A stretch of DNA of 64,000 bases, from the NCBI GenBank assembly GCA_026770705.1, contig JANJGN010000323.1:558001-622000 (forward strand), read 5' to 3'. This document shows, piece by piece, positions 23,701-53,070 of this stretch. The stretch comes from Isurus oxyrinchus. Its lineage: Eukaryota. The first letter of the stretch is position 1. Every line of letters begins with the position of its first letter. The notes beneath the pieces were generated by a model, which was not told where the DNA came from, did no database searches, and was given only the letters and a program-made list of their open reading frames with translations. The position numbers and the translations under genes were made by a program.

Positions 23701-26700
23701 GAGGCCCATTCAGTCCCTCGACCCTGTTACACAGGAACTGGTGGAGGCCCATTCTGTTCGTTGGGGCCTGTTACTCAGGAACATGAGACCCATTAAGTCT
23801 CATCAAGCATGTTACACAGGAACTGGAGTAGGCCCCTTCAGCCCATCAAGCTTGTTTCAAGAGAAGAGGTGGAAGCCCACTCAGCCCCTCGAGGCTTTTA
23901 CACAAGAACAAGTGGAGGTCCACTCAGCCCCTCAACCCTGTTACACAGTAACAGGAGAACCATTTATTCCCTCAAGCCTGTTATGCAGGAACAGGAGGAG
24001 GTCCATTCAGCCCCCTCGAGCCTGTTACACTGGAACAGGAGGAGGCCCATTCAGCTCCCCTCGAGCCTGTTACACTGGAACATGAGGAGGCCCATTCAGC
24101 CCCCTCGAGCCTGTTACACAGGAACAGGAGGAGGTCCATTCAGCCCCTCAAGCCTGTTACACAGGAACAGGAGGAGGTCCATTCAGCCCCTCAAGCCTGT
24201 TACACAGAAACAGGAGGAGGCCCATTCAGCCCCTCAAGCCTGTTACACAGGAACAGGAGGAGGTCCATTCAGCCCCCTCGAGCTTGTTACACAGGAACAG
24301 GAGGAGGTCCATTCAGCCCCCCTGAGACTGTTACACAGGAACAGGAGGAGGCCATTCAGCCCCTCAAGCCTGTTACACAGGAACAGGAGGAGGCCCATTC
24401 AGCTCCTCAAGCTTGTTGTAATTGAAGAGGAGGAGGCTTACTCATCCAAACGAGGCTTTTACACAAGAACAAGTGGAGGTCCATTCAGCCCCTCAGCCCT
24501 GTTACACAATAACAGGAGAACCATTCTTTCCCTCAAGCCTGATACACAGGAACAGGAGGAGGCCCATTCAGCCCCTCGAGCCTGTTACACAGGAACAGGA
24601 CAACCATTCATTCCCTCGAGACTGTTACACAGGAACAGGAGGAGGCCCATTCAGCCCCTCGAGCCTGTTACACAGGAACAGGACAACCATTCATTCCCTC
24701 GAGACTGTTACACAGGAACAGGAGGAGGCCCATTCAGCCCCTCGAGCCTGTTACACAGGAACAGGAGGAGGCCCGTTCAGTCCCTCGAGCCTGTTACACA
24801 GGAACAGGAGGAGGCCCATTCAGCCCCCTTGAACCTGTTACACAGGAACAGGAAGAGGCCCATTCAGTCCCCTTGACCCTGTTACACAGGAACAGGAGGA
24901 GGTCCATTCAGCCCCTCAAGCCTGTTACACAGGAACAGGAGGAGGCCCATTCAGCCCCTCAAGCCTGTTACACAGGAACAGGAGGAGGCCCATTCAGCTC
25001 CTCAAGCTTGTTGTAATAGAAGAGGAGGAGGCCTACTCATCCAAACGAGGCTTTTACACAAGAACAAGTGGAGGCCCACTCAGCCCCTCAACCCTGTTAC
25101 ACAGTAACAGGAGAACCATTCATTCCCTCAAGCCTGTTATACAGGAACAGGAGAACCATTCATCCCCTTGACCCTGTTACACAGGAACAGGAGGAGGCCC
25201 ATTCAGCCCCTCGATCCTGTTACACAGGAACAGGAGGAGGCCCATTCAACCCCCTCGACCCTGTTACACAGGAACAAGAAGAGGCCCATTCAGCCCCCTC
25301 GAGCCTGTTACACAGGAACAGAATGAGGTCCATTCAGCCCCTCGAGCCTGTTTCAAAAGAACAGGAGGAGGCCCATTCGTCTCCACGAACCTGTTACTTA
25401 GGAACAGGAGGAGGCCCATTTGCCTCATGAGCCTGTTACACAGGAACAAGTGGAGGTCCACTTAGCCCCTCAACCATGTTACACAGTAACAGGAGAACCA
25501 TTCATTTCCTCGAGACTGTTACACAGGAACAGGAGGAGGCCCATTCAGCCGCTCGAGCCTGTTACACAGGAACAGCACAAACATTCATTCCCTCGAGACT
25601 GTTACACAGGAACAGGAAGAGGCCCATTCAGTCCCTCGAACCTGTTACACAGGAACATGAGACCCATTCAATCCCATCAAGCTTGTTACACAGGAACTGG
25701 AGGAGGCCCATTCAGCCCCTCAAGCTTGTTTCAGGAGAAGAGGCGGAGTCCCACTCAGCCCCTCGTGGCTTTTACACTGGAACAAGTGGAGGACCACTCA
25801 GCCCCTCAACCCTGTTACACAGGAACAGGAGAGCCATTCATTCCCGCGAGCCTGTTACACAGGAACAGGAGGAGGTCCATTCAGCCCCTCGAGCCTGTTA
25901 CACAGAAACAGGAGGAGGCCCATTCAGCCCTGTCGAGCTTGTTACACAGGAACAGGAGAGCCATTCATTCCCGCGAGCCTGTTACACAGGAACAGGAGAA
26001 GGTCCATTCAGCGCCTCTGAGACTGTTACACAGGAACAGGAGAACCATTCAGTCCCTTGAGACTGTTACACAGGAACAGGAGGAGGCCCATTCAGCCCCC
26101 CTGAGACTGTTACACAGGAACAGTAGAACCATTCTTTCCCTCAAGCCTGATACACCGGAACAGGAGGAGGCCCATTCAGCCCCTCGAGCCTGTTACACAG
26201 GAACAGGAGGAGGTCCATTCAGTCCCTCAAGCCTGTTACACAGAAACAGGAGGAGGCCCATTCAGCCCCCTCGAGCTTGTTACACAGGAACAGGAGGAGG
26301 CCCATTCAGCCCCCCTGAGACTGTTACACAGGAACAGGAGAACCATTCAGCCCCTCGAGCCTGTTACACAGGAACAGGAGGAGGCCCATTCAGTCCCTCG
26401 ACCCTGTTACACAGGAACTGGTGGAGGCCCATTCTGTTCGTTGGGGCCTGTTACTCAGGAACATGAGACCCATTAAGTCTCATCAAGCATGTTACACAGG
26501 AACTGGAGTAGGCCCCTTCAGCCCATCAAGCTTGTTTCAAGAGAAGAGGTGGAAGCCCACTCAGCCCCTCGAGGCTTTTACACAAGAACAAGTGGAGGTC
26601 CACTCAGCCCCTCAACCCTGTTACACAGTAACAGGAGAACCATTTATTCCCTCAAGCCTGTTATGCAGGAACAGGAGGAGGTCCATTCAGCCCCCTCGAG

Positions 26701-29700
26701 CCTGTTACACAGGAACAGGAGGAGGTCCATTCAGCCCCCTCAAGCCTGTTACACTGGAACAGGAGGAGGCCCATTCAGCCCCCTCGAGCTTGTTACACAG
26801 GAACCGGAGGAGGCCCATTCAGTCCCTCAAGCCTGTTACACAGAAACAGGAGGAGGCCCATTCAGCCCCCTCGAGCTTGTTACACAGGAACAGGAGGAGG
26901 TCCATTCAGCCCCCCTGAGACTGTTACACAGGAACAGGAGGAGGCCATTCAGCCCCTCAAGCCTGTTACACAGGAACAGGAGGAGGCCCATTCAGCTCCT
27001 CAAGCTTGTTGTAATAGAAGAGGAGGAGGCCTACTCATCCAAACGAGGCTTTTACACAAGAACAAGTGGAGGTCCATTCAGCCCCTCAGCCCTGTTACAC
27101 AATAACAGGAGAACCATTCTTTCCCTCAAGCCTGTTACACAGGAACAGGAGGAGGCCCATTCAGCCCCTCGAGCCTGTTACACAGGAACAGGACAACCAT
27201 TCATTCCCTCGAGACTGTTACACAGGAACAGGAGGAGGCCCATTCAGCCCCTCGAGCCTGTTACACAGGAACAGGAGGAGGCCCGTTCAGTCCCTCGAGC
27301 CTGTTACACAGGAACAGGAGGAGGCCCATTCAGCCCCCTTGAACCTGTTACACAGGAACAGGAAGAGGCCCATTCACTCCCCTTGAGCCTGTTACACAGG
27401 AACAGGAGGAGGCCCATTCAGCCGCTCAAGCCTGTTACACAGGAACAGTAGGAGGCCCATTCAGTCGCTCGAGCCTGTTACACAGGAACTGGAGGAGGCC
27501 CATTCAGCCCCTCAAGCTTGTTTCAGGAGAAGAGGCGGAGTCCCACTCAGCCCCTCGTGGCTTTTACACTGGAACAAGTGGAGGACCACTCAGCCCCTCA
27601 AACCTGTTACACAGGAACAGGAGTGCCATTCATTCCCGCGAGCCTGTTACACAGGAACAGGAGGAGGTCCATTCAGTCCCTCGAGCCTGTTACACAGGAA
27701 CAGGAGGAGGCCCATTCAGTCCCTCGAGTCTGTTACACAGGAACAGGAGGAAGCCCATTCAGCCCCCTCGAGCCTGTTACACAGGAACAGGAAGAGGCCC
27801 ATTCAGTCCCCTTGACCCTGTTACAAAGGAACAGGAGGAGGCCCATTCAGCCCCTCAAGCCTGTTACACAGGAACAGGAGGAGGCCCATTCAGCCCCTCA
27901 AGCCTGTTACACAGGAACAGGAGGAGGCCCATTCAGCCCCTCAAGCCTGTTACACAGGAAAAGGAGGAGGCCCATTCAGCCCCTCAAGCCTGTTACACAG
28001 GAACAGGAGGAGGCCCATTTGCCTCATGAGCCTGTTACACAGGAACAAGTGGAGGTCCACTTAGCCCCTCAACCATGTTACACAGTAACAGGAGAACCAT
28101 TCAGTCCCTCGAGTCTGTTACACAGGAACAGGAGGAGGCCCATTCAGCCCCTTGACCCTGTTACACAGGAACAGGAGGAGGCCCATTCAGTCCCCTTGAC
28201 CCTGTTACACAGGAACAGGAGGAGGTCCATTCAGCCCCTCAAGCCTGTTACACAGGAACAGGAGGAGGCCCATTCAGCTCCTCAAGCTTGTTGTAATAGA
28301 AGAGGAGGTGGCCTACTCATCCAAACGAGGCTTTTACACAAGAACAAGTGGAGGCCCACTCAGCCCCTCAGCCCTGTTACACAGTAACAGGAGAACCATT
28401 TATTCCCTCAAGCCTGTTATACAGGAACAGGAGAACCATTCAGCCCCTCGATCCTGTTACACAGGAACAGGAGGAGGCCCATTCAACCCCCTCGACCCTG
28501 TTACACAGGAACAAGAAGAGGCCCATTCAGCCCCCTCGAGCCTGTTACACAGGAACAGGATGAGGTCCATTCAGCCCCTCGAGCCTGTTTCAAAAGAACA
28601 GGAGGAGGCCCATTTGTCTCCACGAACCTGTTACTTAGGAACAGGAGGAGGCCCATTTGCCTCATGAGCCTGTTACACAGGAACAAGTGGAGGTCCACTT
28701 AGCCCCTCAACCATGTTACACAGTAACAGGAGAACCATTCATTTCCTCGAGACTGTTACACAGGAACAGGAGGAGGCCCATTCAGCCCCGCGAGCCTGTT
28801 ACACAGGAACAGCACAAACATTCATTCCCTCGAGACTGTTACACAGGAACAGGAGGAAGCCCATTCAGTACCTCGAGTCTGTTACACAGGAACAGGAAGA
28901 GGCCCATTCAGTCCCTCGAACCTGCTACACAGGAACATGAGACCCATTCAATCCCATCAAGCCTGTTACACAGCAACAGGAGGAGGCCCATTCAGCCCCT
29001 CAAGCTTGTTTCAGGAGAAGAGGCGGAGTCCCACTCAGCCCCTCGTGGCTTTTACACTGGAACAAGTGGAGGACCACTCAGCCCCTCAAACCTGTTACAC
29101 AGGAACAGGAGAGCCATTCATTCCCGCAAGCCTGTTACACAGGAACAGGAGGAGGTCCATTCAGTCCCTCAAGCCTGTTACACAGAAACAGGAGGAGGCC
29201 CATTCAGCCCCCTCGAGCTTGTTACACAGGAACAGGAGGAGGTCCATTCAGCCCCCCTGAGACTGTTACACAGGAACAGGAGGAGGCCATTCAGCCCCTC
29301 AAGCCTGTTACACAGGAACAGGAGGAGGCCCATTCAGCTCCTCAAGCTTGTTGTAATAGAAGAGGAGGAGGCCTACTCATCCAAACGAGGCTTTTACACA
29401 AGAACAAGTGGAGGTCCATTCAGCCCCTCAGCCCTGTTACACAATAACAGGAGAACCATTCTTTCCCTCAAGCCTGATACACAGGAACAGGAGGAGGCCC
29501 ATTCAGCCCCTCGAGCCTGTTACACAGGAACAGGACAACCATTCATTCCCTCGAGACTGTTACACAGGAACAGGAGGAGGCCCATTCAGCCCCTCGAGCC
29601 TGTTACACAGGAACAGGAGGAGGCCCGTTCAGTCCCTCAAGCCTGTTACACAGGAACAGGAGGAGGCCCATTCAGCCCCCTTGAACCTGTTACACAGGAA

Positions 29701-32243
29701 CAGGAAGAGGCCCATTCAGTCCCCTTGACCCTGTTACACAGGAACAGGAGGAGGCCCATTCAGCCCCTCAAGCCTGTTACACAGGAACAGGAGGAGGCCC
29801 ATTCAGCCCCTCGAGCCTGTTACACAGGAACAGGAGGAGGCCCATTCAGTCCCTTGAACCTGTTACACAGGAACATGAGACCCATTCAATCCCATCAAGC
29901 CTGTTACACAGGAACTGGAGGAGGCCCATTCAGCCCCTCAAGCTTGTTTCAGGAGAAGAGGCGGAGTCCCACTCAGCCCCTCGTGGCTTTTACACTGGAA
30001 CAAGTGGAGGACCACTCAGCCCCTCAACCCTGTTACACAGGAACAGGAGAACCATTCTTTCCCTCAAGCCTGATACACAGGAACAGGAGGAGGCCCATTC
30101 AGCCCCTCGAGCCTGTTACACAGGAACAGGAGGAGGTCCATTCAGTCCCTCAAGCCTGTTACACAGAAACAGGAGGAGGCCCATTCAGCCCCCTCGAGCC
30201 TGTTACACAGGAACAGGAGGAGGCCCATTCAGCCCCCCTGAGACTGTTACACAGGAACAGGAGAACCATTCAGTCCCTCGAGACTGTTACACAGGAACAG
30301 GAGGAGGCCCATTCAGTCCCTCGACCCTGTTACACAGGAACTGGTGGAGGCCCATTCTGTTCGTTGGGGCCTGTTACTCAGGAACATGAGACCCATTAAG
30401 TCTCATCAAGCATGTTACACAGGAACTGGAGTAGGCCCCTTCAGCCCATCAAGCTTGTTTCAAGCAAAGAGGAGGAAGCCCACTCAGCCCCTCGAGGCTT
30501 TTACACAAGAACAAGTGGAGGTCCACTCAGCCCCTCAACCCTGTTACACAGTAACAGGAGAACCATTCATTCCCTCAAGCCTGTTATGCAGGAACAGGAG
30601 GAGGTCCATTCAGCCCCCTCGAGCCTGTTACACAGGAACAGGAGGAGGTCCATTCAGCCCCCTCAAGCCTGTTACACTGGAACAGGAGGAGGCCCATTCA
30701 GCCCCCCTCGAGCCTGTTACACTGGAACCGGAGGAGGCCCATTCAGTCCCTCGAGCCTGTTACACAGGAACAGGAGGAGGCCCATTCAGTCCCTCGAGCC
30801 TGTTACACAGAAACAGGAGGAGGTCCATTCAGTCCCTCAAGCCTGTTACACAGAAACAGGAGGAGGCCCATTCAGCCCCCTCGAGCTTGTTACACAGGAA
30901 CAGGAGGAGGTCCATTCAGCCCCCCTGAGACTGTTACACAGGAACAGGAGGAGGCCATTCAGCCCCTCAAGCCTGTTACACAGGAACAGGAGGAGGCCCA
31001 TTCAGCTCCTCAAGCTTGTTGTAATAGAAGAGGAGGAGGCCTACTCATCCAAACGAGGCTTTTACACAAGAACAAGTGGAGGTCCATTCAGCCCCTCAGC
31101 CCTGTTACACAATAACAGGAGAACCATTCTTTCCCTCAAGCCTGATACACAGGAACAGGAGGAGGCCCATTCAGCCCCTCGAGCCTGTTACACAGGAACA
31201 GGACAACCATTCATTCCCTCGAGACTGTTACACAGGAACAGGAGGAGGCCCATTCAGCCCCTCGAGCCTGTTACACAGGAACAGGAGGAGGCCCATTCAG
31301 CCCCTCGAGACTGTTACACAGGAACAGGAGGAGGCCCATTCAGCCCCTCGAGCCTGTTACACAGGAACAGGTGGAGGCCCGTTCAGTCCCTCGAGCCTGT
31401 TACACAGGAACAGGAGGAGGCCCATTCAGCCCCCTTGAACCTGTTACACAGGAACAGGAAGAGGCCCATTCACTCCCCTTGACCCTGTTACAGAGGAACA
31501 GGAGGAGGCCCATTCAGCCCCTCAAGCCTGTTACACAGGAACAGGAGGAGGCCCATTCAGTCGCTCGAGCCTGTTACACAGGAACTGGTGGAGACCCATT
31601 CAGCCCCTCAAGCTTGTTTCAGGTGAAGAGGCGGAGTCCCACTCAGCCCCTCGTGGCTTTTACACTGGAACAAGTGGAGGACCACTCAGCCCCTCAACCC
31701 TGTTACACAGGAACAGGAGAGCCATTCATTCCCGCAATGCTGTTACACAGGAACAGGAGCAGGTCCATTCAGCCCCCTCGAGCTTGTTACACAGGAACAG
31801 GAGGAGGCCCATTCAGTCCCTCGAGCCTGTTACACAGGAACAGGAGGAGGCCCGTTCAGCCCCCTTGAGCCTGTTACACAGGAACAGCAGGAGGTCCATT
31901 CAGCCCCTCAACCCTGTTACACAGGAACAGGAGGAGGTCCATTCAGTCCCTCAAGCCTGTTACACAGAAACAGGAGGAGGCCCATTCAGCCCCCTCGAGC
32001 TGGTTACACAGTAACAGGAGGAGGTCCATTTAGTCCCAGGAGCCTGTTATACGGGAACAAGAGGAGGCCCATTCAGCCCCCTCGAGCCTGTTGCACAGGA
32101 ACAGGAGGAGGCCCATTCATCTCCCTGAACATGTTACACAGGAACAGGAGGCCCATTCAGCCCCTTGCCCCTCTGACACAGGAACAGGAGGCCCATTCAG
32201 CCCCTTGCCCCTCTGACACAGGAACAGGAGGAGGCCCATTCAG
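17703..32243. repeat. ~14.5-kb satellite of a ~43-bp unit (CCTGTTACACAGGAACAGGAGGAGGCCCATTCAGCCCCTCGAG) with higher-order structure
   Basis: Several hundred tandem 40-44-bp units; variant blocks recur at kb spacing. Confidence 0.97.
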
Positions 32244-32790
32244 CAGTCCCTCAGAACTGACACTCTGACAGTGCGGCACTCCCTCAGTACTGACAATCTG
32301 ACAGTGCAGCACTCCCTCAGTACTGACCTTCCGACAGTGCAGCACTCCCTCAGTACTGACCCTCTGACAGTGCAGCACTCCCTCAGTACTGACCTTCCGA
32401 CAGTGCAGCACTCCCTCAGTACTGACCGTCTGACAGTGCAGCACTCCCTCAGTACTGAACCTCTGACCGTGCAGCGCTTCCTCAGTACTGACCCTATGAC
32501 AGTGCAGCACTCACTCAGTACTGACCTTCTGACAGTGCAGCACTCCCTCAGTACTGACCCTCTGACAGTGCAGCACTCCCTCAGTACTGACCCTCTGACA
32601 GTGCAGCCCTCTCTCAGTACTGACACTCTGACAGTACAGCCCTCTCTCAGTATTGACCATACGACAGTGCAGCATTCCCTCAGTACTGACCCTCTGACAG
32701 TGCAGCACTGCCTCAGCACTGACCCTCTGACAGTGCAGCACTGCCTCAGTACTGACCCTCTGACAATGCAGCACTCCCTCAGCACTCCCT
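32244..32790 (-). repeat. 33-bp minisatellite array, right flank of the large satellite
   Basis: Same unit and orientation as 17165-17702. Confidence 0.95.
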
Positions 32791-34040: not shown

Positions 34041-34308
34041 GGACTAAACTCACTGAGAGAAAAAGCTGGACACCGAGCACAGAGAGTGAGGGAACAATGA
34101 ATTTTTGCCGTGTTTGGTGAATCGATTTGCGATGTCCATTCTGAATCTCTCCTTCCTTGTCTTGACATTACTTTATTCCCAGGGGCTGTTTAACTCACTG
34201 AAAGGTGCCATTTAAACACAAGTTGTTGTTGTTTGAGGAAGAAACACTGGGGACAATTTCTGAAAAAGTCTCTGTCTTTATCATTTCCATTTAGATGAGG
34301 AACTGAAG

Positions 34309-34354
34309 ATGGGAGAGGTCGGTCTGATATTGATCTTCATCAGCTTGCTGCAAG
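34309..34354 (+). CDS. Gene 2: signal-peptide exon
   Basis: Acceptor at 34294; ATG in good context (AAGATGG); MGEVGLILIFISLLQ+G|GTACAA, phase 1. A short uORF (ATGAGGAACTGA) lies at 34295-34306. Confidence 0.75.
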
Positions 34355-34529
34355 GTACAAATTCATTACTGATCGGAACTCAGGGAATTGGATTCTTTCC
34401 TGGAGTGAGGAAGTGAGGATGTTTCAGAGATAGGGAAGGTTGTAGGGAGGGTTGTAGGAGATGGAGGAGGTTACAGAGTTAGGGAGTGTTGCAGGGGCTG
34501 GAGGAGGTTACAGAGAGAGGGAGGGGAGC

Positions 34530-34745
34530 ACTGCCTCAGTACTGATACTCCGAACGTCCAGCACACCATCAGTACTGACCATCAGACAGTGCAGCACTCC
34601 CTCATTACTGACCCACCGACAGTCCAGCACTCCCTCAGTACTGACCCTCTGACATTGCAGCACTCCCTCAGTACTGACCCTCCGACAGTGCAGCACTCCC
34701 TCAGTACTGATCTTCCAACAGTGCAGCACTCCCTCAGCACTCCCT
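34530..34745 (-). repeat. Short 33-bp minisatellite array
   Basis: Same unit; starts the block duplicated from ~14.8-15.8 kb. Confidence 0.9.
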
Positions 34746-35494
34746 CACTGGGGCGAGTCCATCCGCATTTTGAGCTGAAACCTTGAGATGGTCTCAAAAC
34801 CCCAACCTTCCATCTCGGAGAGAGAGAGTGCGTTTGTGTGAGAGAGAGAGACAATGTATGTGTGAGAGACTGAGAGTGTGTATGTGTGAGAGAGCAAAAG
34901 AGAGTTAGAGTGTGTGTGCATGAGAGAGGGAGGTAGCTTGTGTGTGTAAGAGAGAGAGCGTGTGTGAGAGAAAGAGAATGTCTATGTGAGAGTGAGAGTG
35001 AGTTTATCTGTGAGAGATAAAGGTAATGAGAGAATGTGTGTGTGAGATAGTGTGTTTGTGAAAGAGCGTGTGTGTGATAGTGTGTTTGTGTATGTGAGAG
35101 TGTGTGTGTGAGATCGTGTGTGTGTGTGTTTGAGAGAGGGTGTGTGTGTTTGAGAGAGAGGGTGATTGTGCGTTTGAGAGAGGGAGTGAGAGAGAACATG
35201 TGTGTGAGAGAGAGTGTGCGTGTGTATGTGTGTGCGTGAAAGAGAAAGTGTTTGTGCAAAAGAGTGTGTGTTTGAGAGTATGTGTGCATGTGTGAGTGTG
35301 CATCTGTGTGTGTGTGTGTGTGTGTGTGCATTCTGACTGAGCCGAGTTCACAGTTTCACACGTTGCTAGGGACCACTTTTCCACCTCTCTGTCAGACTGT
35401 GTGTATCTGACAGCAGGTCAGGCAGAAATAGTCCAGAATGCGCTGTGGTTTTGTAGCATTGAAACAACAACATGAACTAAATGAGTGCTGCACC

Positions 35495-35553
35495 ACTATC
35501 AGTGTGTGGCAGAGAATGAGCGTTGGAGGGATTTATAACCATCTCTGTAGAAC
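35495..35553 (+). pseudogene. Gene 2: 3' remnant of a C2-set exon
   Basis: actatcagtgtgtggcagagaatga...atttataaccatctctgtagaac|gtgagt matches the end of the C2 exons (YQCVAENE...FITISVE); no acceptor, internal deletion. Confidence 0.8.
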
Positions 35554-35594
35554 GTGAGTTACACAGAATTGAACATTCTCTCGTTGTTAGCTCA

Positions 35595-36625
35595 TGGGAT
35601 GTGGGCATTGTTGACAAGGCCAGAAATTATTGCCCATCTGTAACTGCCCCTTGAGAAGGTGGTGGTGTGTTGCCTTCTTTAAGCACTGCAGTCCATGTGT
35701 GTAGGTACACCCACAGTGCTGTTAGGGTGGGAGTTCCAGGATTTTGACCCAGCGACGGTGAAGGAACAGCCGATATATTTCCAAGTCCCAGGGCAGACCA
35801 CCACCTCATGTTCACCTCCAAATCACACACCATACTGACTTGGAACTGTCTTGGTGGAAGAGGTTAAGGGTTTGGAAGGTGCTGTCGAAGGAGCCTTGGT
35901 GAGTTGTTGCAGCGCATCTTGTAGATGGTGCACACTGCTGCCATTGTGTGCCAGTGGTGGAGGGTATGAATGTTTATGCTGGTGGATGGGCTGTCGATCA
36001 AACAAGCAGCTCCTGGATGGTGTCGAGCTTCTTGAGTGTTGTTGGAGCTGCACTTATCCAGCCAAGTGGAGATTATTCCATCACACTCCTGACTTGTGCC
36101 TTGTCAATGGTGGACAGGCTTTGGGGGGTCAGGAGGTGAGTTACTCACCGCAGAGTTCCCAGCCTCTTACCCGCTCTTGTAGCCACATTATTTCCTGTTG
36201 CCGGGTTGTTGCCAGGGCCAATAGCCTTTGCTGTATCCAGTATCATCAGCTGATTCCTGATGTCACGTGGAGTCAATCGAATTGTCTGAAAGCTGACATC
36301 TGTGATGCTGGGACCCTCTGGAGGAGGCCGAGATGGAGCATCCACTCAGCACTTCTGGCTGAACCTGGTTGCCAATGCTTCAGCCTTGTCGTTTGCACTG
36401 ATGTGCTGAGCTCCCCCATCATTAAGGATGGGGATATTTGTGGAGCATCCTCCTCCTGTTAGATCTTTAATTGTCCATCACCATTCATGACTGGATGTGG
36501 CAGGACTGCAGAGCTTAGATCTGACCCGTTGGTTGTGGGATCGCTTTGCTCTGTCTATAGCATGTTGTTTCCGCTGTTTGGTGTGTATGTAGTCCTGTGT
36601 GTCACCTCAGCAGCTTGGCACCTCT
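35595..36625 (-). mobile_element. Degenerate LINE fragments, same family as 10241-11315
   Basis: Reverse complement matches the tail (gatgggcaataatttctggcct) and ORF2 C-terminal segments. Confidence 0.85.
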
Positions 36626-36816
36626 GTTATATGTGAATCCTCCTTATAGAAACCTGCATGTACATGGATATTATCAATAAATATTACATAGATAAATGTT
36701 ATTTGTATAGACCTTTCATGCATAGACAATATCACTTCACAAGTTCAGAATTACTACATGTACACAGGGAACCATTCTCAAACTGTACCGGAGTCATTCA
36801 TTGGCTGATTTTACAG

Positions 36817-36913
36817 GGCGAGATTCCAATGAATGGAAAGCAGGATTGCTTGGAGCTGGAATCTGTTTGAGTGTTGGACTGAGTGGATTCTTCATCTTCA
36901 AGTGTGTGAGAAA
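36817..36913 (+). CDS. Gene 2: transmembrane exon
   Basis: tttacag acceptor, GTAAGT donor, 97 nt like the gene 1 TM exon; RDSNEWKAGLLGAGICLSVGLSGFFIFKCVRK. Confidence 0.85.
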
Positions 36914-37224
36914 GTAAGTGTGAAGCTTTAATTGGTTGTTTTTGAAAATGTTTTCTTCAACCTTCTCTCCTTATAGAAAGAATTTGCATTTCTATAGCAC
37001 CTTTCACAACCCAAAACCCTTCACAGCCCCTGAAGAGCTTTGATGTTCAACCACTATTGAACATCTCATCCTACACTCCCTGTTTGACAACGCAGTCCTG
37101 TAACTGGCAGTGTTGACCCGGACCATAAAATACCCTGTGACCCCTTGAGGATGTGAAAGGTGCTATATAAATGAAAACCTTTCTTTCGTTAGTGCATGCA
37201 ATCTCATTCCATTTTCCATGTTTC

Positions 37225-37380
37225 ATTCACTCTCTCTTATCTCCACTAATGCTCTCCTCTCATTCTCTCTCTCATTCACTCTCTCTCTAATCTCCAATAA
37301 TGCTCTCCTTCTCATTCTCTCTCTCATTCACTCTCTCTCAAATCTCCACTAATGCTCTCCTTCTCATTCTCTCTCTCGTC
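37225..37380. repeat. Short CT-rich tandem repeat (~43-45 bp, 3-4 copies)
   Basis: cattcactctctct...atctccactaatgctctcc repeated. Confidence 0.75.
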
Positions 37381-37669
37381 CTCTTACACATTGTTCAGTA
37401 TCTCACATTTTTAAGGAGCGCTGAGCAACATCTGCTCCTTCAGAAGATCCACCTCAACATCTGGACTGAGCAGTGAATTGAAACTCGCTCAACGACTGTT
37501 CAGCTTTACACAGGAATCACGTCACAGAGTCAGGACACAAAGGGTTAACAGATAGTTTACAACACAACACTAAGGCCCTACGTTTCAATGAAAGGGTTTT
37601 CACAATTGTTCCCCAATTCCTGATTTTGTCTCACAGAGACACATCAACCCTTTCTCATTAAATACACAG

Positions 37670-37754
37670 AGGCAGCAGCACAGGAAGAGGTCATTCAGCC
37701 CAAGCAGAGCGTGTGGGCAGTTCCTCCCCAGGCGAGCAGTCGGACAGGTCCTGG
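37670..37754 (+). CDS. Gene 2: putative cytoplasmic exon 1 (85-nt shared exon)
   Basis: tacacag acceptor, TGG|GTAAGT donor; 1+84 nt gives the phase 2 to 0 bridge the gene needs; (K)GSSTGRGHSAQAERVGSSSPGEQSDRSW. Confidence 0.6.
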
Positions 37755-37954
37755 GTAAGTAACGGAACGATTGGAATTCACTTCCACCACCAACACCGTC
37801 CTTTGTTGATGTTGTGACTTTATAAAGACAGATTCCAATGATTGATGCCTTTGAAAGGTTTCTACTGATTATTGAGATCTGGGTGTGAGGCTCAAGTCTG
37901 TTGTACAGAACATCTTTCTGGTTAAATTATGCAGACAGGTTACACACAGTCTAC

Positions 37955-38197
37955 GATTATATTCCCTCGGGTCTAGAAGATTAAGGAGTGATCTAACTGA
38001 GGGGTTCAAAATGATTAAACACTCGATAGGGTCGATAGAGAGAAGCTATTCCCTCGGGTGGGGGTGGGTGGTGGGGGTCGGGTGAAGTCCAGAACAAGGG
38101 GGCTGGAACTTCAGATTGGAGCCAGGCCGTTCAGGGGTGATGTCAGGAAGCACTTCTTCACACAAAGGGGAGTGGAAATCTGGAACTCTCTCCCCAG
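37955..38197 (+). mobile_element. CR1 LINE 3' fragment
   Basis: LYSLGSRRLRSDL...; TRGLELQIGARPFRGDVRKHFFTQRGVEIWNSLP. Confidence 0.85.
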
Positions 38198-38265
38198 TGA
38201 TCAAACCCAACACCGAATACACATCATGTTGATTGTCACTCTGTCCATTTCCATCTCTATTACAG

Positions 38266-38370
38266 AAGAGAGGCGAGGGGAAAGCAGGAATCAAATCGAA
38301 CCACCGTGTTGATGAATATCGAGGTCCTGTTTATGAAAACTGTGAGCGTGGTTGGGCTTTGAGGAATCAG
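38266..38370 (+). CDS. Gene 2: cytoplasmic exon 2 (YENC)
   Basis: Pyrimidine tract + tacag acceptor, CAG|GTGAGT donor, phase 0/0; KRGEGKAGIKSNHRVDEYRGPVYENCERGWALRNQ. Confidence 0.75.
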
Positions 38371-38501
38371 GTGAGTCACACACCACAGGATCCCCAGCCT
38401 CTCAGCTGCTCCAGTAGCCTGGTTATTGATATGGCTGCTCCAGTCCTGTATCTGCAATTTTTTATACAGTCACTCCCAAACCCAACCAAACTCACACCCA
38501 A

Positions 38502-39625
38502 CACCGTTCAGAATCAATAATCAAACCCCGATCAGAATCAATAATCAAACCCCGTTCAGTATCAATAATCAAACCCCGTTCAGTATCAATAATCAAACCC
38601 CGTTCAGTATCAATAATCAAACCCCGTTCAGAATCAATAATCAAACCCCGTTCAGAATCAATAATCACACCCCGTTCAGTATCAATAATCAAACACCGTT
38701 CAGAATCAACAATCAAACCCCATTCAGTATCAATAATCAAACCCTGTTCAGTATCAATAATCAAACCCCGTTCAGTATCAATAATCAAACCCCGTTCAGT
38801 ATCAATAATCAAACCCCATTCACTATCAATAATCAAACCCCGTTCAGTATCAATAATCAAACCCCGTTCAGAATCAATAATCAAACCCCATTCAGAATCA
38901 GTAATCAAACCCCGTTCAGTATCAATAATCAAACCCCGTTCAGAATCAATATTCAAACCCCGTTCAGAATCAATATTCAAACCCCATTCAGTATCAATAT
39001 TCAAACCCCGTTCAGTATCAATAATCAAACCCCGTTCAGAATCAATAATCAAACCCCGTTCAGAATTAATAATCAAACCTCGTTCAGTATCAATAATCAA
39101 ACCCCTTTCAGAATCAATAATCAAACCCCGTTCAGAATCAATAATCAAACCCCGTTCAGTACCAATAATCAAACCCCGTTCAGTATCAATAATCAAACCC
39201 TCTTCAGAATCAATTATCAAACCCCGTTCAGTATCAATAATCAAACCCCATTCACAATCAATAATCAAACCCCGTTCAGTATCAATAATCAAACCCTGTT
39301 CAGAATCAATAATCAAACCCCGTTCAGAATCAATAATCAAACCCCATTCACAATCAATAATCAAACCCCGTTCAGTATCAATAATCAAACCCTGTTCAGA
39401 ATCAATAATCAAACCCCATTCAGAATCAATAATCAAACCCCATTCAGTATCAATAATCAAACCCCATTCAGAATCAATAATCAAACCCCGTTCAGAATCA
39501 ATAATCAAACCCTATTCACAATCAATAATCAAACCCCTTTCAGAATCAATAATCAAACCCCATTCACAATCAATAATCAAACCCCGTTCAGTATCAATAA
39601 TCAAACCCTGTTCAGTGTCAATAAT
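38502..39625. repeat. 24-bp minisatellite (ATCAATAATCAAACCCCGTTCAGW), ~47 units, intronic
   Basis: Direct tandem repeat; the INNQTPFS ORF is an artefact. Confidence 0.97.
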
Positions 39626-39723
39626 TAATGTATGTATTGTGGGTGGAATTTTCGATTTGGATCAATAATACTAAACACTGATCACTCTGATTGTCACTCT
39701 GATCATTTCTGTTTCTATTACAG

Positions 39724-39840
39724 AAGAAAGATGAGAAGGATCTGGAAATGAAATCTAACCGCGGAGTCAATCCTGATACAGATGATGATCTTTACGCAAA
39801 CTGTGAATTTGCCAAGGATTCTGTTTATGGGAATTTATAA
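39724..39840 (+). CDS. Gene 2: terminal cytoplasmic exon (YANC, SVYGNL*)
   Basis: ctattacag acceptor, phase 0; KKDEKDLEMKSNRGVNPDTDDDLYANCEFAKDSVYGNL*, with acidic residues before the tyrosines as in kinase substrate sites. Confidence 0.82.
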   Translation, partial: KKDEKDLEMKSNRGVNPDTDDDLYANCEFAKDSVYGNL

Positions 39841-40959
39841 ACTGAGCAAGAATGAGACACACACAGTGTGGGGAGAATACAGAATGGGAGAATCATTCAA
39901 AACTCCAATTTACCTTCCTAATATCCACAGGAACTCACTCCCAGGAAATAGATTTAAACCTCTTGTTACAATCTGATGGAATTTCTTCGGAATGATCTAT
40001 CCAGGATGATTGTCTGTGGGTTTCAATTTGAACATGATCCTTCAGAATTGTCCCTCACTGTTGGAAACATCCTTCTCTCCATTCTGATTGTAAATGTCTT
40101 TAGATATCGTTCGATGATGTACCAGGACAGAACGGACAAATTCAATCCCGTGTCCGTGATTATGAGTTAATTTTCATTCTGTTATTCACCTTCCTGTCTG
40201 TCAGTGTTTACAGAATATTCATCAGCCAGTGCAGACTTCAGGAAATGCAGGATCGGTGGATAATTGGAGCAGAGGAGATTGGCAAAATTTACTCAGCATT
40301 TTGTAATCAAATGTATTTTCAGAAATATATTTGGATTTTACACTTCATCGTTAAACCGCAAAACTAACAGCAATCCCAGAAACATGGAAACAATTTGTTT
40401 GGAGATTTGAGAAATTCTCTGCAGCTCAGAGGATAACAGATGTGCTACAGTGCCACCACTGGTGGGAGGACATCATTTCAGCGTGACATGTTTACATTGA
40501 TGTTGCCAATGAACATTGGAAATTATGATGTGAAAAATTGGTTGCAGGCTTACCTTCTTCAATATGTCATAGATGGATGAGACAGCTTTGATAACAGAAT
40601 GAGATATAGCTGCAATAAACCACCATTTTAGTCTTTCACACTTGGAGAGTACAATTAGCATCCATTCTGAAGGCTGAGTGGATGGGTGGACTGTGCGATG
40701 TGTTACAGATTACAGAGACCAACATCCTTGATCCTGGTTCTGCTCTATGTCTGATGACATTCTTGGATAAAAGATTGGGAAAATAAATAATCCTCCTGCA
40801 TTGATCTGTAACTGGTCTCTCCATCTGTCAATGTCCTGAGGACAGAATTGGGTTTGAGGTCCAAAATCAGATGCATACTTTGACTGCCCATTGAGTAGGA
40901 ACAGGAAGAGGCCATTCAGCCCCCTCGAACCTGCTACACAGGAACAAGAGGGCACCTGA

Positions 40960-42142: not shown

Positions 42143-42215
42143 CATTCTTGGCACGCAAAGGGTTAACAGTTTTCTAACTGTGCGAGGCAAAGTGTTGCTT
42201 TCTAACTTGGTACTA

Positions 42216-42231
42216 ACCACTTCCTCATTTT
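42216..42231 (-). promoter_or_regulatory. PU.1/ETS-type site at putative promoter A (also ~44428, ~57663, ~63110)
   Basis: ccacttcctcatttt = AAAATGAGGAAGTGG just upstream of the shared exon; degenerate (aattcctgatttt) in the gene 2 copy. Confidence 0.5.
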
Positions 42232-42273
42232 GTCTCACAGTGACACATCAACCCTTTCTAATTAAACACACAG

Positions 42274-42358
42274 AGGGAGCAGCACAGGAAGAGGTCATTC
42301 AGCCCAAGCAGAGCGTGTGGGCAGTTCCTCCCCAGGCGAGCAGTCGGACAGGTCCTGG
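42274..42358 (+). other. Module A: putative 5' non-coding exon (85-nt shared exon; 5' boundary uncertain)
   Basis: Near-identical to 37670-37754, GTAAGT donor, upstream of a leader exon. Confidence 0.6.
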
Positions 42359-42801
42359 GTAAGTAACGGAACGATTGGAATTCACTTCCACCACCAACAC
42401 CATCCTTTGTTGATGTTGTGACTTTATAAAGACAGATTCCAATAACTGATGCCTTTGAAAGATTTCTACTGATTATTGAGATCTGGGTGTGAGGCTCAAG
42501 TCTGTTGTACAGAACATCTTTCTAGCTCAAGGGATGAGGGAAGAGCAGGGACATGAGCTTTGGGGTGTCCTGAGCAGGTGAAAGGCGATATAGAAATGCA
42601 AGTCCTTCATTGTTTTACTTTCTTAAAGCCTTGTAACTCTCTGCAGAGCACATATCATCCCACAGAGAATGAAATTAGTCTGTGAAGACATTGTCTAAAA
42701 GCAGTTCTGATCTCTCGAGAGGTGTCGGACAAGAGGTGAGGTCTCATTAACTCATTTCTCTTTCACAGCTTGAGAACCAATGAAATACCTGGGAGTGGAC
42801 A

Positions 42802-42841
42802 ATGATCAGGAAATCTTACTTCCTCCTGTCACTTCTCCAAG
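42802..42841 (+). CDS. Module A: signal-peptide exon (alternative or orphan leader)
   Basis: Acceptor at 42768; MIRKSYFLLSLLQ+G|GTAATA, phase 1; out-of-frame upstream ATG at 42780. Confidence 0.65.
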
Positions 42842-43625
42842 GTAATATCATTGTCAGCTCAGATAGATTTATGACTAATCATCTTTGTAAAACATAATTC
42901 TTATTGAGCTGTGATTGGGAACAGATTCAGCAGTGAGCCAGTGTACAATCTCACACCAAGTCCCATTCACCCATCACCCCCGTGCTCACTGATATACACT
43001 GACTCCCTGTCTGACAGCAGAATTGGAGGACAGCAGAGGACTTTGAGGTTTGCATGGTTGGAGGAGAAAGTGATTGGAGAAGAGGAATGGAGGGAATGGA
43101 AATTGAGGATGAGAGTCTTAAACTCGAGGCTCTGCTGGACTGGGAGCCAGTGCAGGTCAGCGAGTGGCAGAGGGTGTGAGGTGTTGAGTCGAGAAACAGT
43201 GATAAATACTGGGGATGACGTCTATCCTGATGCTTGGACTCCGATAGCAAAGGAATGAAATTTGTGTCTTTTGCTGATTCTGTCAGAATTTCCCATGAAG
43301 ACAACACAGCAGCTCCTAGAATAGACAGGCTGTTCAGTGTCACACTTCCTGTCCATTCTCACCTTGCTAGATACTTCAATAAGGGAGCAAGATAACTGAA
43401 AGAGAGAAGGAAGGTAAAGCTGTCCGTGTGTAAAGGTGTCAATATTCAGTTTGCATATTTGTCTTTCTCTCGACACATGCAGAACTCAGGCTAGAGGCGC
43501 TTTGTTAGTGTGTTTCACAGTGTCTGCTGGAGTAGGGTCAGTGCTGAGCTTGGGGACAAGTCAGTCTACAATGCTGCATCGGAATCAACAATACAACAAT
43601 ATGGGGTTTGGATCAGAAATAATCC

Positions 43626-44200: not shown

Positions 44201-44483
44201 TGGGGAGTTTCAGTCTACTCTGTGGGGCAGACGTCCCCTGAATGGGGTCTTGAACCCCACAACGTTCTGACCCCCTGAATTTGGCTGTGAAACCCACTGA
44301 CCCACAGGAGAAATTCCTGGTCAATGACTGTCCACCTGTGAGCAGAAATATCACCACAGGGTCAGGACACAAAGGGTTAACAGTTTACCAAGATCTCAAA
44401 ACATGAGCTGCTCTGTCACTTTGATCCAACTTCCTCATTTTGTCTCAAAGTGACACATCAACCCTTTCTAATTAAACACACAG

Positions 44484-44568
44484 AGGGAGCAGCACAGGAA
44501 GAGGTCATTCAGCCCAAGCAGAGCGTGTGAGCAGTTTCTCCCCAGGCGAGCAGTCGGACAGGTCCTGG
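44484..44568 (+). other. Gene 3 / module B: putative 5' non-coding exon
   Basis: Copy of the 85-nt exon, GTAAGT donor. Confidence 0.6.
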
Positions 44569-45018
44569 GTAAGTAACGGAACGATTGGAATTCACTTCCA
44601 CCACCAACACCGTCCTTTGTTGATGCTGTGACTTTATAAAGACAGATTCCAATGATTGATGCCTTTGAAAGATTTCTACTGATTATTGAGATCTGGGTGT
44701 GAGGCTCAAGTCTGTTGTACAGAACATCTTTCTAGCTCAAGGGATGAGGGAAGTGCAGAGACATGAGCTTTGGGATATCCTGAGCAGGTGAAAGGTGCTA
44801 TAGAAATGCAAGTCCTTCATTGATTTATTTTTTTAAAGGTTTTTAACTCTCTGCAGAGCACCTATCATCCCACAGAGAACCAAATTAGTCTGTGAAGACA
44901 TTGTCTAAAAGCAGTTCTGATCTCTCGAGAGCTGTCGGACAAGAGGTGAGGTCTCATTAACTCCTTTCTCTTTCAGAGTTTGAGAGTCAGAAGCTAAAGG
45001 AATATCTGGGAGAGGACA

Positions 45019-45058
45019 ATGATCGGGAAATCTTACTTCCTCCTGTCACTTATCCAAG
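45019..45058 (+). CDS. Gene 3 (activating Siglec-like): signal-peptide exon
   Basis: MIGKSYFLLSLIQ+G|GTAATA; joins the V exon in frame (…LIQVGLSQEW). Confidence 0.75.
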
Positions 45059-45759
45059 GTAATATCATCGTCAGCTTGGACAGACTTATGGCTAATAGAA
45101 TTTGTAAAAGAACATTCTTATTGAGCTGTGAAAGGGAACCGATTCAGCAGTGAGCCAGTGTACAAACTCACACCAAGTCCCATTCACCCATCACCCCTGT
45201 GCTCACTGATATACACTGACTCCCTGTCTGACAGCAGAACTGCAGGACAGCAGAGACCTCAAAGGTTTTCAGGGCTGGAGGAGGTGACAGTGATAGGGAT
45301 TAGAGAGGGAGGATGGAGGGTAAGGAATCAATGAAGAGATTTTGAAAATTGAGGCTTTGCTGGACTGGGAGCCAGTGTAGGTCAGCGAGTGACAGGGGAG
45401 CGATCGGCTGAATAGAGAAGCAGGGATAAAAACTGGGGAATGAAGTCTATCCTGATGCAAGCACTCCGATATCAATGCCCTGAAATTTTTCTCTCTTGCT
45501 GATTTTCATCAGAATTTCCCATGAAGACAACACAGAAGCTCCTAGAATAGACAGGCTGTTCAGCGTCACACTTCCTGTCCATTCTCACCATGCTAGAAAA
45601 TTCGATAAGATAGCAAGATAACTGATAGAGAGAAGGGAGGCAAAGCTGTCTGTATGTAAAACTGTCAAATATTCTGAGTTATCATGATTGTTTCTGATCT
45701 GCTGCAGAGTTTATATTTCATTGAAACTTATCACTTTGCAGCTCAGAGAGAGACCATTG

Positions 45760-51254: not shown

Positions 51255-51623
51255 TTGGACTGTCACAAGAATGGGAAAGTAACACTCCACGAGAGGTGAC
51301 AGCGCAGAAAGGTTCATGTGTACAGATTCCATGTCATTACAATTACCCATCACATTTGTTAGAGAAAACACATGTCGGAATCTGGAATATGAGGAGGGAC
51401 AAATGGAATACATTGTCTATAGCCTTTCACTCCAAGGATCACAGTCACGAGTTATCACGGTTCCACCATCGGACCCGGCTGTCTGGAGACCTGAAAGATG
51501 GCGACTGTTCCCTGATTATAAACAACATCAGACGGGAAGATGCAGGATTTTTTTTTTTCAGAATAGAATTTGACAATGGTCGGAGCCATAACTATTACCC
51601 TGAAACCCTGCTTCAGGTTTCTG
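51255..51623 (+). CDS. Gene 3: Siglec V-set exon
   Basis: ccccag acceptor, GTAAGT donor, 369 nt, phase 1/1; GSCVQIPC (two Cys), GDCSL (E-strand Cys) and EDAGFFFFRIE (Arg in the F strand, no canonical Cys) are Siglec hallmarks. Confidence 0.95.
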
Positions 51624-52029
51624 GTAAGTGCTGTGTTATAATTACTCAACAATTCACATCCAACACTCAATGGGAAATAATAGTGTTTGATTTGCTTGTT
51701 TTTTGGCCGTGTTAACCAGTGTCACTATTTTTAATGATTTGTCTATTTCTGCTCCCAGATCCATGAGCTTATTGTGTGTGATTGAATCCACATCATAGCT
51801 GTAACGTAAACCGAGCTGAGGGGTGATGACACCTCCCCCCTGAGTGACGTGTCTCCTCCCCACTACACCTTCCACCCCTCACACCGTCAGGACTGACCTG
51901 GTGACAGTGCGGAGCTAATCACCAACTCACACCTTGGCTTGACCCCCACCCCCACCTCCTCTGGCACTTTCTCCTCCTTTGAATATCTCAACGTGTTCCA
52001 CCCCTCTCATCTCTCCTTCTAAATTCTCG

Positions 52030-52680: not shown

Positions 52681-52899
52681 CATTGTTCTATGCTCCTCTA
52701 GACCATTTAGATTCTTAATTTCGAGTTAACATGCAACCTGGTAACCTGGTGATAGCTTCCAGTTCAGTCCGAAAGCAACCTCTAATACTCACTTTAATAT
52801 CAATGATTAAATATATTGACTGTGTCCATCAATGTTATCAGGTTATCCACTCCCATCGATCTCTCTAATCCTGTCTCGAAGTCTGACATATCGTTAGAA

Positions 52900-53070
52900 T
52901 AAAGATTCACATTTATGTAGCACCTTTCACAACCTCAGCACGGACCAAATCACTTCACAGCCAATGCGCTGATTCCTGAATTGTAGTTACTGTTGTAATG
53001 TGGGAAACACAACAACCAATTTGCGCACAGCAAACTCCCACAAATTGACAAGTAACAAATGACCTAGATC
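52900..53070 (-). mobile_element. DeuSINE 3' fragment
   Basis: Matches 16170-16250; another fragment lies at ~2205-2330. Confidence 0.7.

What the first reader, a model, noticed from the sequence alone, without database searches (positions are those of the whole stretch)
34309..39840. 'Headless' Siglec: Ig exons lost, leaving an intact 149-aa transmembrane adaptor-like ORF
Seen: the leader exon (ends phase 1) can splice straight to the TM exon (starts phase 1). The five exons (46+97+85+105+117 = 450 nt) give MGEVGLILIFISLLQG-RDSNEWK-AGLLGAGICLSVGLSGFFIF-KCVRK-...VYENC...LYANC...SVYGNL* with no stop and canonical splice sites. Only a ~59-nt scrap of an Ig exon remains between them. Established: a tiny ectodomain, a juxtamembrane Cys and several YxN (Grb2 SH2) motifs describe transmembrane adaptors such as LAT, NTAL, SIT and TRIM. 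Inference: a receptor may be turning into an adaptor or ligand-independent modulator. Caveats: the leader lacks the cleavage region normally supplied by the V exon, and a recent pseudogene or misassembly would look the same.
Basis: partly seen in the sequence, partly recalled or inferred. Interest (0 to 1): 0.85.

Follow-up and report, generated by a model that had tools for sequence, protein, structure and literature searches.

The report
Shark Siglec gene copy without Ig exons
One copy in a shark Siglec immune-receptor gene cluster has lost all its antibody-like exons but keeps an unbroken leader, membrane anchor and tyrosine tail; it is most likely a leftover of a deletion, not a newly evolved signalling adaptor.

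Summary
Five GT-AG-bounded exons (34309-34354, 36817-36913, 37670-37754, 38266-38370, 39724-39840) join into 149 codons plus a stop. The only Ig sequence between leader and TM exon is the last 59 nt of a C2 exon (35495-35553), which carries a 7-nt deletion.

The features read as "adaptor-like" are not special to this copy. The TM exon, the 85-nt exon and the tyrosine exons form the standard membrane/tail module of an annotated shark Siglec subfamily. The TM is 31/31 identical to a great-white-shark protein that still has Ig domains. Mustelus and Scyliorhinus proteins have homologous TM and tail segments.

All Ig exons here are phase 1-1, so any deletion of them keeps the frame. Neighbouring copies in the window are visibly decaying.

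The protein collection holds no Ig-less protein of 145-460 aa with this TM.

Best reading (0.62): an Ig-less relic of a YxN-tail Siglec gene made by a deletion, possibly still transcribed. A working adaptor or decoy is unsupported but not excluded (about 0.15).

The scan's first readers noted similar Ig-less models on other pieces of this genome (s1-871718, also 149 aa; s1-870005). Neither was checked.

The parts
34295..34354 (+). Leader exon. AG acceptor at 34293-34294, a short uORF ATG at 34295, the main ATG at 34309 (A at -3, G at +4), 15 codons + 1 nt, donor GTACAA.
   Evidence: The hydrophobic core VGLILIFISLL has a Kyte-Doolittle mean of 3.1. Such ORFs are rare in the window. It ends SLLQ|G like the family leader MIGKSYFLLSLLQ but is otherwise unlike it.
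34527..35494 (.). Repeat block filling the place of the lost Ig exons: a 33-mer satellite (34527-34741), a GA/GT-rich tract and about 150 bp of unique sequence. It is a paralogous copy of 14784-15812 (87.6% identity). Its 3' end is the deletion breakpoint.
35495..35559 (+). Relic of the last C2-set Ig exon (59 nt, 35495-35553) with its donor GTGAGT (35554-35559). It has no acceptor, a 7-nt deletion and 6/59 mismatches.
35617..36600 (-). Fragment of a dispersed repeat. It looks LINE-like to me from memory, but Pfam gave no hit. It lies in the intron before the TM exon. Other copies are at 10707-11291 and under the 3' end of exon 4.
36817..36913 (+). Stalk/TM exon (97 nt, phase 1 to 2), ending in the juxtamembrane FKCVRK.
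   Evidence: It is 31/31 aa identical to P0003 (Carcharodon carcharias), 97% to P0013, 94% to Cetorhinus, 79-84% to Scyliorhinus and Mustelus, and 64.5% to gene A's TM exon.
37613..37919 (+). A 307-bp segment present five times in the window at about 97%. It holds the 85-nt exon 37670-37754 (phase 2 to 0).
   Evidence: The exon's peptide is a coding tail segment in annotated full-length proteins of five shark species: 96% to P0003 and P0012, 68-81% to the others.
38266..38370 (+). Tyrosine exon 4 (105 nt, VYENC). It is an old partial duplicate of exon 5. Its last 16 nt and its donor come from the dispersed repeat.
   Evidence: It is 43% identical to the terminal segment of Mustelus P0015, which carries EYQGPTYENC. 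The annotated C. carcharias full-length protein P0013 has no such segment.
38500..39625 (.). 24-mer tandem array (47 copies) in the last intron.
39724..39840 (+). Last coding exon (LYANC, SVYGNL, stop TAA at 39838-39840).
   Evidence: It is 62% identical to Mustelus P0016 (YANC...SVYGNI*), 55% to C. carcharias P0013 and 51% to S. torazame P0002.
40614..40787 (+). Two AATAAA hexamers (40614, 40782), candidate polyadenylation signals.
   Evidence: Sequence only; not tested.

Best explanation
Gene B is a deletion derivative of a full-length Siglec-type receptor of the shark 'YxN-tail' subfamily. A rearrangement removed the V exon and all C2 exons. Its 3' breakpoint lies inside the last C2 exon at 35494/35495, and its 5' side lies in the repeat block after a leader exon. 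The leader may come from a different Siglec gene, because it is unlike the subfamily's usual leader. Every Ig exon is phase 1-1, so the leader can still be spliced in frame to the stalk/TM exon, and the standard tail exons follow. The intact 149-codon frame is therefore what a young deletion leaves behind, not evidence of a selected adaptor. The locus is probably a non-functional or weakly transcribed relic in a birth-and-death cluster. Shown: the exon anatomy, the relic, the homology of the TM and tail to full-length proteins, and the decay of the neighbours. Inferred: the deletion mechanism, the young age and the lack of function.
For: (1) The 59-nt C2 relic keeps its own donor and lies a normal intron's distance upstream of the TM exon once the repeat insertion is discounted, as in gene A. 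It carries a 7-nt deletion and 6/59 mismatches, whereas intact copies differ by 2-4/66.
(2) The TM, the 85-nt exon and the tyrosine exons match annotated full-length shark Siglec-like proteins with V and C2 domains: P0013, P0012, P0014, P0015 and P0016. The Cys, the YxN motifs and the terminal SVYGN[LI] are family traits.
(3) The V exon (369 nt) and the C2 exons (282 nt) are phase 1-1, so frame retention is automatic.
(4) The exon that restores the frame after the TM exon (85 nt) is open in all three frames. Without it the tail ends after 32 residues with no tyrosine.
(5) Neighbouring copies are decaying. Gene D has a TGA in its V exon, and its leader copy has an 8-nt deletion and a GT-to-CT donor change. 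Gene C has a 5'-truncated C2 relic.
(6) The leader is bounded upstream by about 17 kb of satellite, leaving 267 bp of unique sequence.
(7) A search with the identical TM and 85-nt segment over proteins of 145-460 aa returned only Ig-bearing proteins and no Ig-less one.
Against: The remaining 450 nt carry no stop or frameshift, and all eight splice sites are canonical. The TM exon is 31/31 and the 85-nt exon 27/28 identical at protein level to a great-white-shark relative, while the 59-nt relic has picked up about 4-5 private substitutions and an indel. Under equal neutral decay, exons 2-3 should show about ten amino-acid changes. Either selection or gene conversion from working paralogues must explain this. 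The 307-bp segment is 96-100% identical among five copies including its intron flanks, which favours conversion, but I could not test the TM exon at nucleotide level. An unchecked first-reader note (s1-871718) reports a 149-aa ectodomain-less model on another piece of the genome, which could mean a second intact copy.
Confidence: 0.62

Rival explanations
1. A working Ig-less membrane protein. The leader is cleaved or acts as a signal anchor. That leaves an ectodomain of about 8 residues, one TM helix and a 106-residue cytoplasmic tail. When phosphorylated, its YxN motifs and its terminal ITIM-like SVYGNL recruit Grb2-type or SHP-type SH2 proteins without any ligand. It would act as an adaptor or as a decoy that competes with full-length Siglecs.
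For: The frame and splice sites are intact. All motif positions shared with the Mustelus, Carcharodon and Scyliorhinus tails are retained. The TM exon is identical to that of a full-length relative although the Ig relic has decayed. The start codon has a strong context. Either topology puts the tail in the cytosol (sequence reasoning). Human CD33m, which lacks the V domain, is reported as a gain-of-function isoform (PMC7992807), so head-truncated Siglecs can be active.
Against: There is no transcript or protein evidence. None of the 'adaptor' features is new to this copy. The junction SLLQG|RDS lacks the c-region that the V exon normally supplies (VGLS in relatives). The tyrosine-bearing frame depends on inclusion of the 85-nt exon. 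No Ig-less protein of 145-460 aa with this TM is in the collection. The cluster is full of dead copies.
Confidence: 0.15
2. The TM and tail exons of B are used as an alternative 3' module by a neighbouring full-length gene through read-through splicing. The Ig-less leader-to-TM form would then be irrelevant.
For: Annotated models in relatives join exons of successive genes. Cetorhinus P0012 runs TM, 85-nt exon, next 85-nt exon, next leader exon, then a V exon out of frame. C. carcharias P0003 runs TM, 85-nt exon, next leader exon.
Against: The nearest upstream Ig exons (gene A, 773-1827) have their own TM and ITIM tail and lie 35 kb away across a 14.5-kb satellite. No read data are available.
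Confidence: 0.08
3. An assembly artefact, or a deletion carried by one haplotype only. The real or alternative locus would still hold V and C2 exons between the leader and the TM exon.
For: The region is packed with satellites. A paralogous block lies at 14784-15812 next to an assembly gap (13997-14261). A C. carcharias protein (P0003) has the identical TM exon directly preceded by intact C2 exons.
Against: There are no Ns in 34-40 kb. The relic carries its own deletion and private substitutions, which a mis-join would not create. P0003's 85-nt segment differs by one residue and is followed by a leader exon, so it is a different locus.
Confidence: 0.08

Closest known systems
Annotated shark 'CD33-like' / 'Siglec-13-like' proteins with a YxN tail (P0013 Carcharodon carcharias 332 aa; P0016 and P0015 Mustelus asterias; P0014 Scyliorhinus canicula; P0012 Cetorhinus maximus)
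   Same: They have the same stalk/TM sequence (79-100% identity), the same segment encoded by the 85-nt exon (68-96%) and the same last exon pattern ...Y[AE]NC...VYGN[LI]-stop (55-62%).
   Different: All of them carry a V-set and one to three C2 domains, and most have the leader MIGKSYFLLSLLQ. Gene B has no Ig exon and a different leader.
Human CD33m (exon-2-skipped CD33, lacking the V-set domain)
   Same: It is a Siglec whose ligand-binding head is missing while the TM and signalling tail stay in frame. It is reported to retain or gain activity (PMC7992807, PMC6712934).
   Different: It arises by alternative splicing of an intact gene and keeps the C2 domain. Here the exons are deleted from the DNA and no Ig domain remains.
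Transmembrane adaptor proteins (SIT, LAT, NTAL/LAB, TRIM) and DAP10. Stated from general knowledge, not tested here.
   Same: On the model: a very short ectodomain, a single TM, a membrane-proximal Cys and several YxN motifs. SIT also carries YGNL and YANL motifs.
   Different: There is no sequence homology (Pfam gave no hit for the tail exons). The motifs are inherited from a receptor tail. Expression, palmitoylation, dimerisation and phosphorylation are all untested.
Truncated and pseudogenised members of mammalian Siglec clusters, shaped by birth-and-death evolution and gene conversion (for example SIGLEC16P and SIGLEC11, PMC5701461)
   Same: A tandem cluster of paired inhibitory and activating copies, with patches homogenised by conversion and many disabled copies.
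   Different: The disabling lesion here is a clean loss of all Ig exons that leaves an open frame, not a point mutation or a small deletion.

Membership tests
Siglec family (sialic-acid-binding Ig-like lectins) | N-terminal V-set domain with the conserved ligand-binding arginine | tested here: not met
   There is no V-like sequence between 34355 and 36816 (tblastn). Neighbouring gene C's V exon does match sialoadhesin, MAG, Siglec-5/-8 and CD33, with the FRIE arginine aligned.
Siglec family (sialic-acid-binding Ig-like lectins) | One or more C2-set Ig domains | tested here: not met
   Only a 59-nt frameshifted relic remains, at 35495-35553.
Shark YxN-tail Siglec subfamily (annotated as CD33-like / Siglec-13-like) | Stalk/TM exon of the type ..WKAGLLGAGI....GFFIFKCVRK | tested here: met
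   31/31 identical to P0003, and 79-97% identical to five other proteins.
Shark YxN-tail Siglec subfamily (annotated as CD33-like / Siglec-13-like) | Cytoplasmic segment encoded by the 85-nt exon, followed by a last exon with Y-x-N-C and a terminal V-Y-x-N-[LIV] | tested here: met
   Exon 3 is 68-96% identical and exon 5 is 51-62% identical, with the motifs in register.
Shark YxN-tail Siglec subfamily (annotated as CD33-like / Siglec-13-like) | Leader MI[GR]KSYFLLSLLQ | tested here: not met
   B's leader MGEVGLILIFISLLQ shares only the last four residues. The DNA is not alignable.
Transmembrane adaptor proteins (functional class: LAT, NTAL, SIT, TRIM) | No ligand-binding ectodomain (fewer than about 20 extracellular residues) | tested here: inconclusive
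   This is true of the conceptual product only. Splicing, signal cleavage and the protein itself were not observed.
Transmembrane adaptor proteins (functional class: LAT, NTAL, SIT, TRIM) | Membrane-proximal Cys used for palmitoylation or dimerisation, and several phosphorylatable tyrosine motifs that recruit SH2 proteins | not testable with these tools
   The residues are present (KCVRK; VYENC, LYANC, SVYGNL), but the Ig-bearing relatives have them too.
Pseudogene (disabled duplicate) | A lesion that removes the ancestral function | tested here: met
   All Ig exons are lost.
Pseudogene (disabled duplicate) | Stops or frameshifts in the remaining exons, or lack of transcription | tested here: not met
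   There is no stop or frameshift in the 450 nt. Transcription could not be tested.

The most novel reading that the evidence does not exclude
The Ig-less copy is transcribed and translated into a membrane protein of about 130-149 aa. It presents a Siglec YxN/ITIM-like tail without any lectin head. It would be a ligand-independent adaptor or a decoy for Grb2/SHP-type partners, kept intact by selection and possibly present in more than one copy in the genome. That would be a natural example of a receptor becoming an adaptor.
Probability: 0.12. Interest if true: 0.6.

Novelty: new member of a known kind. Interest (0 to 1): 0.3.

Why it matters
If it is only a relic, it is one more by-product of birth-and-death evolution in a shark Siglec cluster. 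Its main use is then a caution for annotation: phase 1-1 Ig exons make in-frame 'headless' models easy to draw. If the product were made, it would show how a signalling adaptor can arise from a receptor by loss of the ectodomain. It would also add a ligand-independent player to a paired-receptor system that is still undescribed in the papers I could search.

Tried and rejected
(1) Read evidence. The look-up of sequencing runs listed 24 runs. So I have no junction, depth or long-read evidence. Those places were sent to no search tool afterwards. Local scripts still used the whole window file as a BLAST subject.

No nucleotide-level comparison or gene-conversion test of the TM exon was possible.

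(3) phmmer of exon 5 against 1.84 billion representatives gave two hits. One is an unrelated repeat protein. The other is S. torazame GCB77003.1 (158 aa): a TM and tail behind an N-terminus that looks repeat-derived to me, probably a partial gene model. A search with it found only itself.

(4) Pfam gave nothing for the TM and tail exons or for the dispersed repeat.

(5) Rejected idea: that exons 3-5 are a wreck assembled from a 5'-UTR unit and a repeat. The annotated full-length proteins show that the 85-nt exon and both tyrosine exon types are standard coding exons across shark orders.

(6) Rejected idea: that gene A's 82-nt cytoplasmic exon has a homologue in B. None was found.

(7) dN/dS of the TM exon against gene A is 0.9. 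This is uninformative because the paralogues are old.

(8) The search of earlier findings by sequence was blank.

(9) Paper searches found nothing on shark Siglec clusters.

(10) The joined five-exon model was translated only in local scripts. So there was no exact look-up of the 149-aa product, no structure prediction and no signal-peptide predictor.
Full report
**What is there**

The window is a repeat-rich stretch of a shark Siglec cluster. The neighbouring V exon (51255-51623) matches sialoadhesin, MAG, Siglec-5/-8 and CD33 best among solved structures, with the ligand-binding arginine aligned. It also matches Pfam V-set and Ig_CD22. The closest annotated proteins come from Carcharodon carcharias and Cetorhinus maximus, then Scyliorhinus and Mustelus. 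The source is therefore probably a lamniform shark. Paralogy prevents a firmer statement.

**The observation**

All have AG acceptors and GT donors. Their phases are 0-1, 1-2, 2-0, 0-0 and 0-0. Joined, they give 149 codons and a TAA.

The leader exon has its own acceptor at 34294, a strong start context and an 11-residue hydrophobic core. Outside (TG)n runs, only about three ORFs of this kind exist on both strands of the 64 kb. This one ends SLLQ|G + gta like the family leader. I accept it as a real leader exon.

Between it and the TM exon, tblastn with the window's V and C2 exons finds a single Ig trace. It is the last 59 nt of a C2 exon (35495-35553) followed by its GTGAGT donor. It has a 7-nt deletion and 6/59 mismatches, whereas intact copies differ from each other by 2-4 of 66.

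The rest of that interval consists of:
- a 33-mer satellite;
- a GA/GT-rich tract and a short unique piece, which together with the satellite form a block also present at 14784-15812 (87.6% identity; the homology ends exactly at the relic);
- a roughly 1-kb fragment of a dispersed repeat.

**What the TM and tail exons are**

I first suspected that exons 3-5 were debris, for three reasons:
- The 85-nt exon lies in a 307-bp segment present five times in the window at about 97%.
- In four of those copies the segment sits about 0.5 kb upstream of a leader exon (MI[RG]KSYFLLSL[LI]Q), that is, at the 5' end of genes.
- Exon 4 is an old partial duplicate of exon 5, and its donor comes from the dispersed repeat.

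Protein searches overturned that view. Using a C. carcharias hit (P0003) as a stepping stone, I found annotated full-length shark Siglec-like proteins that carry V and C2 domains followed by the same module:
- The TM exon is 31/31 identical to P0003, 97% to P0013, 94% to Cetorhinus and 79-84% to Scyliorhinus and Mustelus.
- The 85-nt exon's peptide is 96% identical to P0003 and P0012, and 68-81% to the others.
- Exon 5 is 62% identical to Mustelus P0016 (...YANC...SVYGNI-stop) and 55% to C. carcharias P0013.
- Exon 4 is 43% identical to the terminal segment of Mustelus P0015 (EYQGPTYENC).

So the juxtamembrane Cys, the YxN motifs and the terminal ITIM-like SVYGNL are inherited family traits, conserved across shark orders. 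This agrees with earlier follow-up notes of the scan on other windows (s1-863554, s1-868573). Here I tested it independently.

The same hits show read-through gene models in relatives. These splice the 85-nt exon to the next gene's 85-nt exon or leader exon (P0012, P0003).

**Is the intact frame meaningful?**

Mostly it is not:
- The V exon (369 nt) and the C2 exons (282 nt) are all phase 1-1. Deleting any set of them leaves leader and TM in frame.
- The 85-nt exon is open in all three frames. Only its length matters.
- If the 85-nt exon is skipped, the product ends 32 residues after the TM with no tyrosine. An earlier follow-up reported such skipping for a paralogue; I did not check that here.
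- If exon 4 is skipped, as in the annotated P0013 architecture, the frame stays open (114 aa).

One point goes the other way. The relic has clearly decayed, yet exons 2-3 differ by at most one residue from a full-length great-white-shark protein. Equal neutral decay would predict about ten amino-acid changes. Gene conversion is a ready explanation. The 307-bp segment is 96-100% identical among five copies including 220 bp of non-coding flank, more than the surrounding unit sequence at 85-95%.

**Context**

The cluster is decaying around gene B:
- Gene D's V exon has a TGA where gene C has CGA (60058-60060).
- Gene D's leader copy (58895-58926) has an 8-nt deletion and a GT-to-CT donor change.
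- Gene C carries a 5'-truncated C2 relic between its C2 exon and its Arg-containing TM exon.
- Gene B's leader has only 267 bp of unique sequence between it and about 17 kb of satellite.
- The junction SLLQG|RDS lacks the c-region (VGLS) that the V exon supplies in relatives. Cleavage after Gly16 or use as a signal anchor are both conceivable, and either puts the tail in the cytosol. This is reasoning from the sequence only.

**What could not be done**

There is therefore no evidence for or against the 34354>36817 junction or the assembly. Those places were sent to no search tool afterwards.

It was translated only in local scripts.

A search with the identical TM and 85-nt segment over proteins of 145-460 aa found only Ig-bearing proteins. 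This is weak negative evidence, because I do not know whether this genome's own annotation is in the collection.

**Verdict**

The structure is real and correctly described. The best explanation (0.62) is a deletion-derived, Ig-less relic of a YxN-tail Siglec gene, possibly chimeric in its leader. It is kept looking 'intact' by youth, by conversion or by both. The rivals are:
- a working adaptor or decoy, about 0.15;
- use of the tail exons by read-through from other genes, about 0.08;
- an artefact or a haplotype-specific deletion, about 0.08.

First readers of the scan noted similar Ig-less models on other pieces of this genome (s1-871718, also 149 aa; s1-870005). If those are independent intact copies, the functional reading would gain weight. 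I could not check them.

Noticed in passing
window 60023-60387 and 58895-58928: Gene D looks dead. Its V exon has an in-frame TGA at 60058-60060 where gene C has CGA. The leader copy upstream has an 8-nt deletion and its donor GT is changed to CT.
   Followed up: partly
window 51255-55377: Gene C consists of a V exon (51255-51623), a C2 exon (about 53350-53642), a 5'-truncated relic of a second C2 exon (53968-54132) and a TM exon (55238-55377) with an intramembrane Arg and a stop after a 12-residue tail. The relic's donor could disturb splicing of this 'activating' copy.
   Followed up: partly
window 42153-43462, 44367-45691, 57661-59104, 63111-63873: Four copies of a 5' unit made of the 85-nt exon and, about 0.5 kb downstream, a leader exon MI[RG]KSYFLLSL[LI]Q. 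Two stand in tandem before gene C. The 307 bp around the 85-nt exon are 96-100% identical among all copies. The rest of the unit is only 85-95% identical, which points to conversion or a regulatory role.
   Followed up: partly
proteins P0012 (Cetorhinus maximus) and P0003 (Carcharodon carcharias): Annotated models in relatives are read-through chimeras. They run TM exon, 85-nt exon, the next gene's 85-nt exon or leader exon, and in P0012 the next V exon out of frame. Either real intergenic splicing occurs in this cluster or these are annotation artefacts.
   Followed up: no
window 773-9057: Gene A is partial at the window start and is a classical inhibitory copy. It has C2 exons at 773-1054 and 1546-1827, a TM exon at 2638-2734, an 82-nt cytoplasmic exon at 3612-3693 and a last exon at 8809-9057 with LLYANI and TEYAQI. 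A 4.7-kb 33-mer satellite (3907-8618) sits inside its last intron.
   Followed up: partly
window 13997-15812: A copy of the repeat block that replaced B's Ig exons lies at 14784-15812. The 265-N assembly gap (13997-14261) lies roughly where a leader exon would be expected upstream of that copy. Nothing was filled in or looked up.
   Followed up: no
window 17703-32244 and 38500-39625: A 14.5-kb 43-mer satellite lies directly upstream of gene B's leader region. A 24-mer array of 47 copies lies inside B's last intron.
   Followed up: no
protein P0002 (Scyliorhinus torazame GCB77003.1, 158 aa): This is a database model that also looks 'headless': a TM and YxN tail (LYENC, ALYANI-stop) behind an N-terminus that looks repeat-derived to me. 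It is probably a partial gene model from a fragmented assembly. Its 47-residue segment between the TM and the last exon is unrelated to the 85-nt exon.
   Followed up: partly
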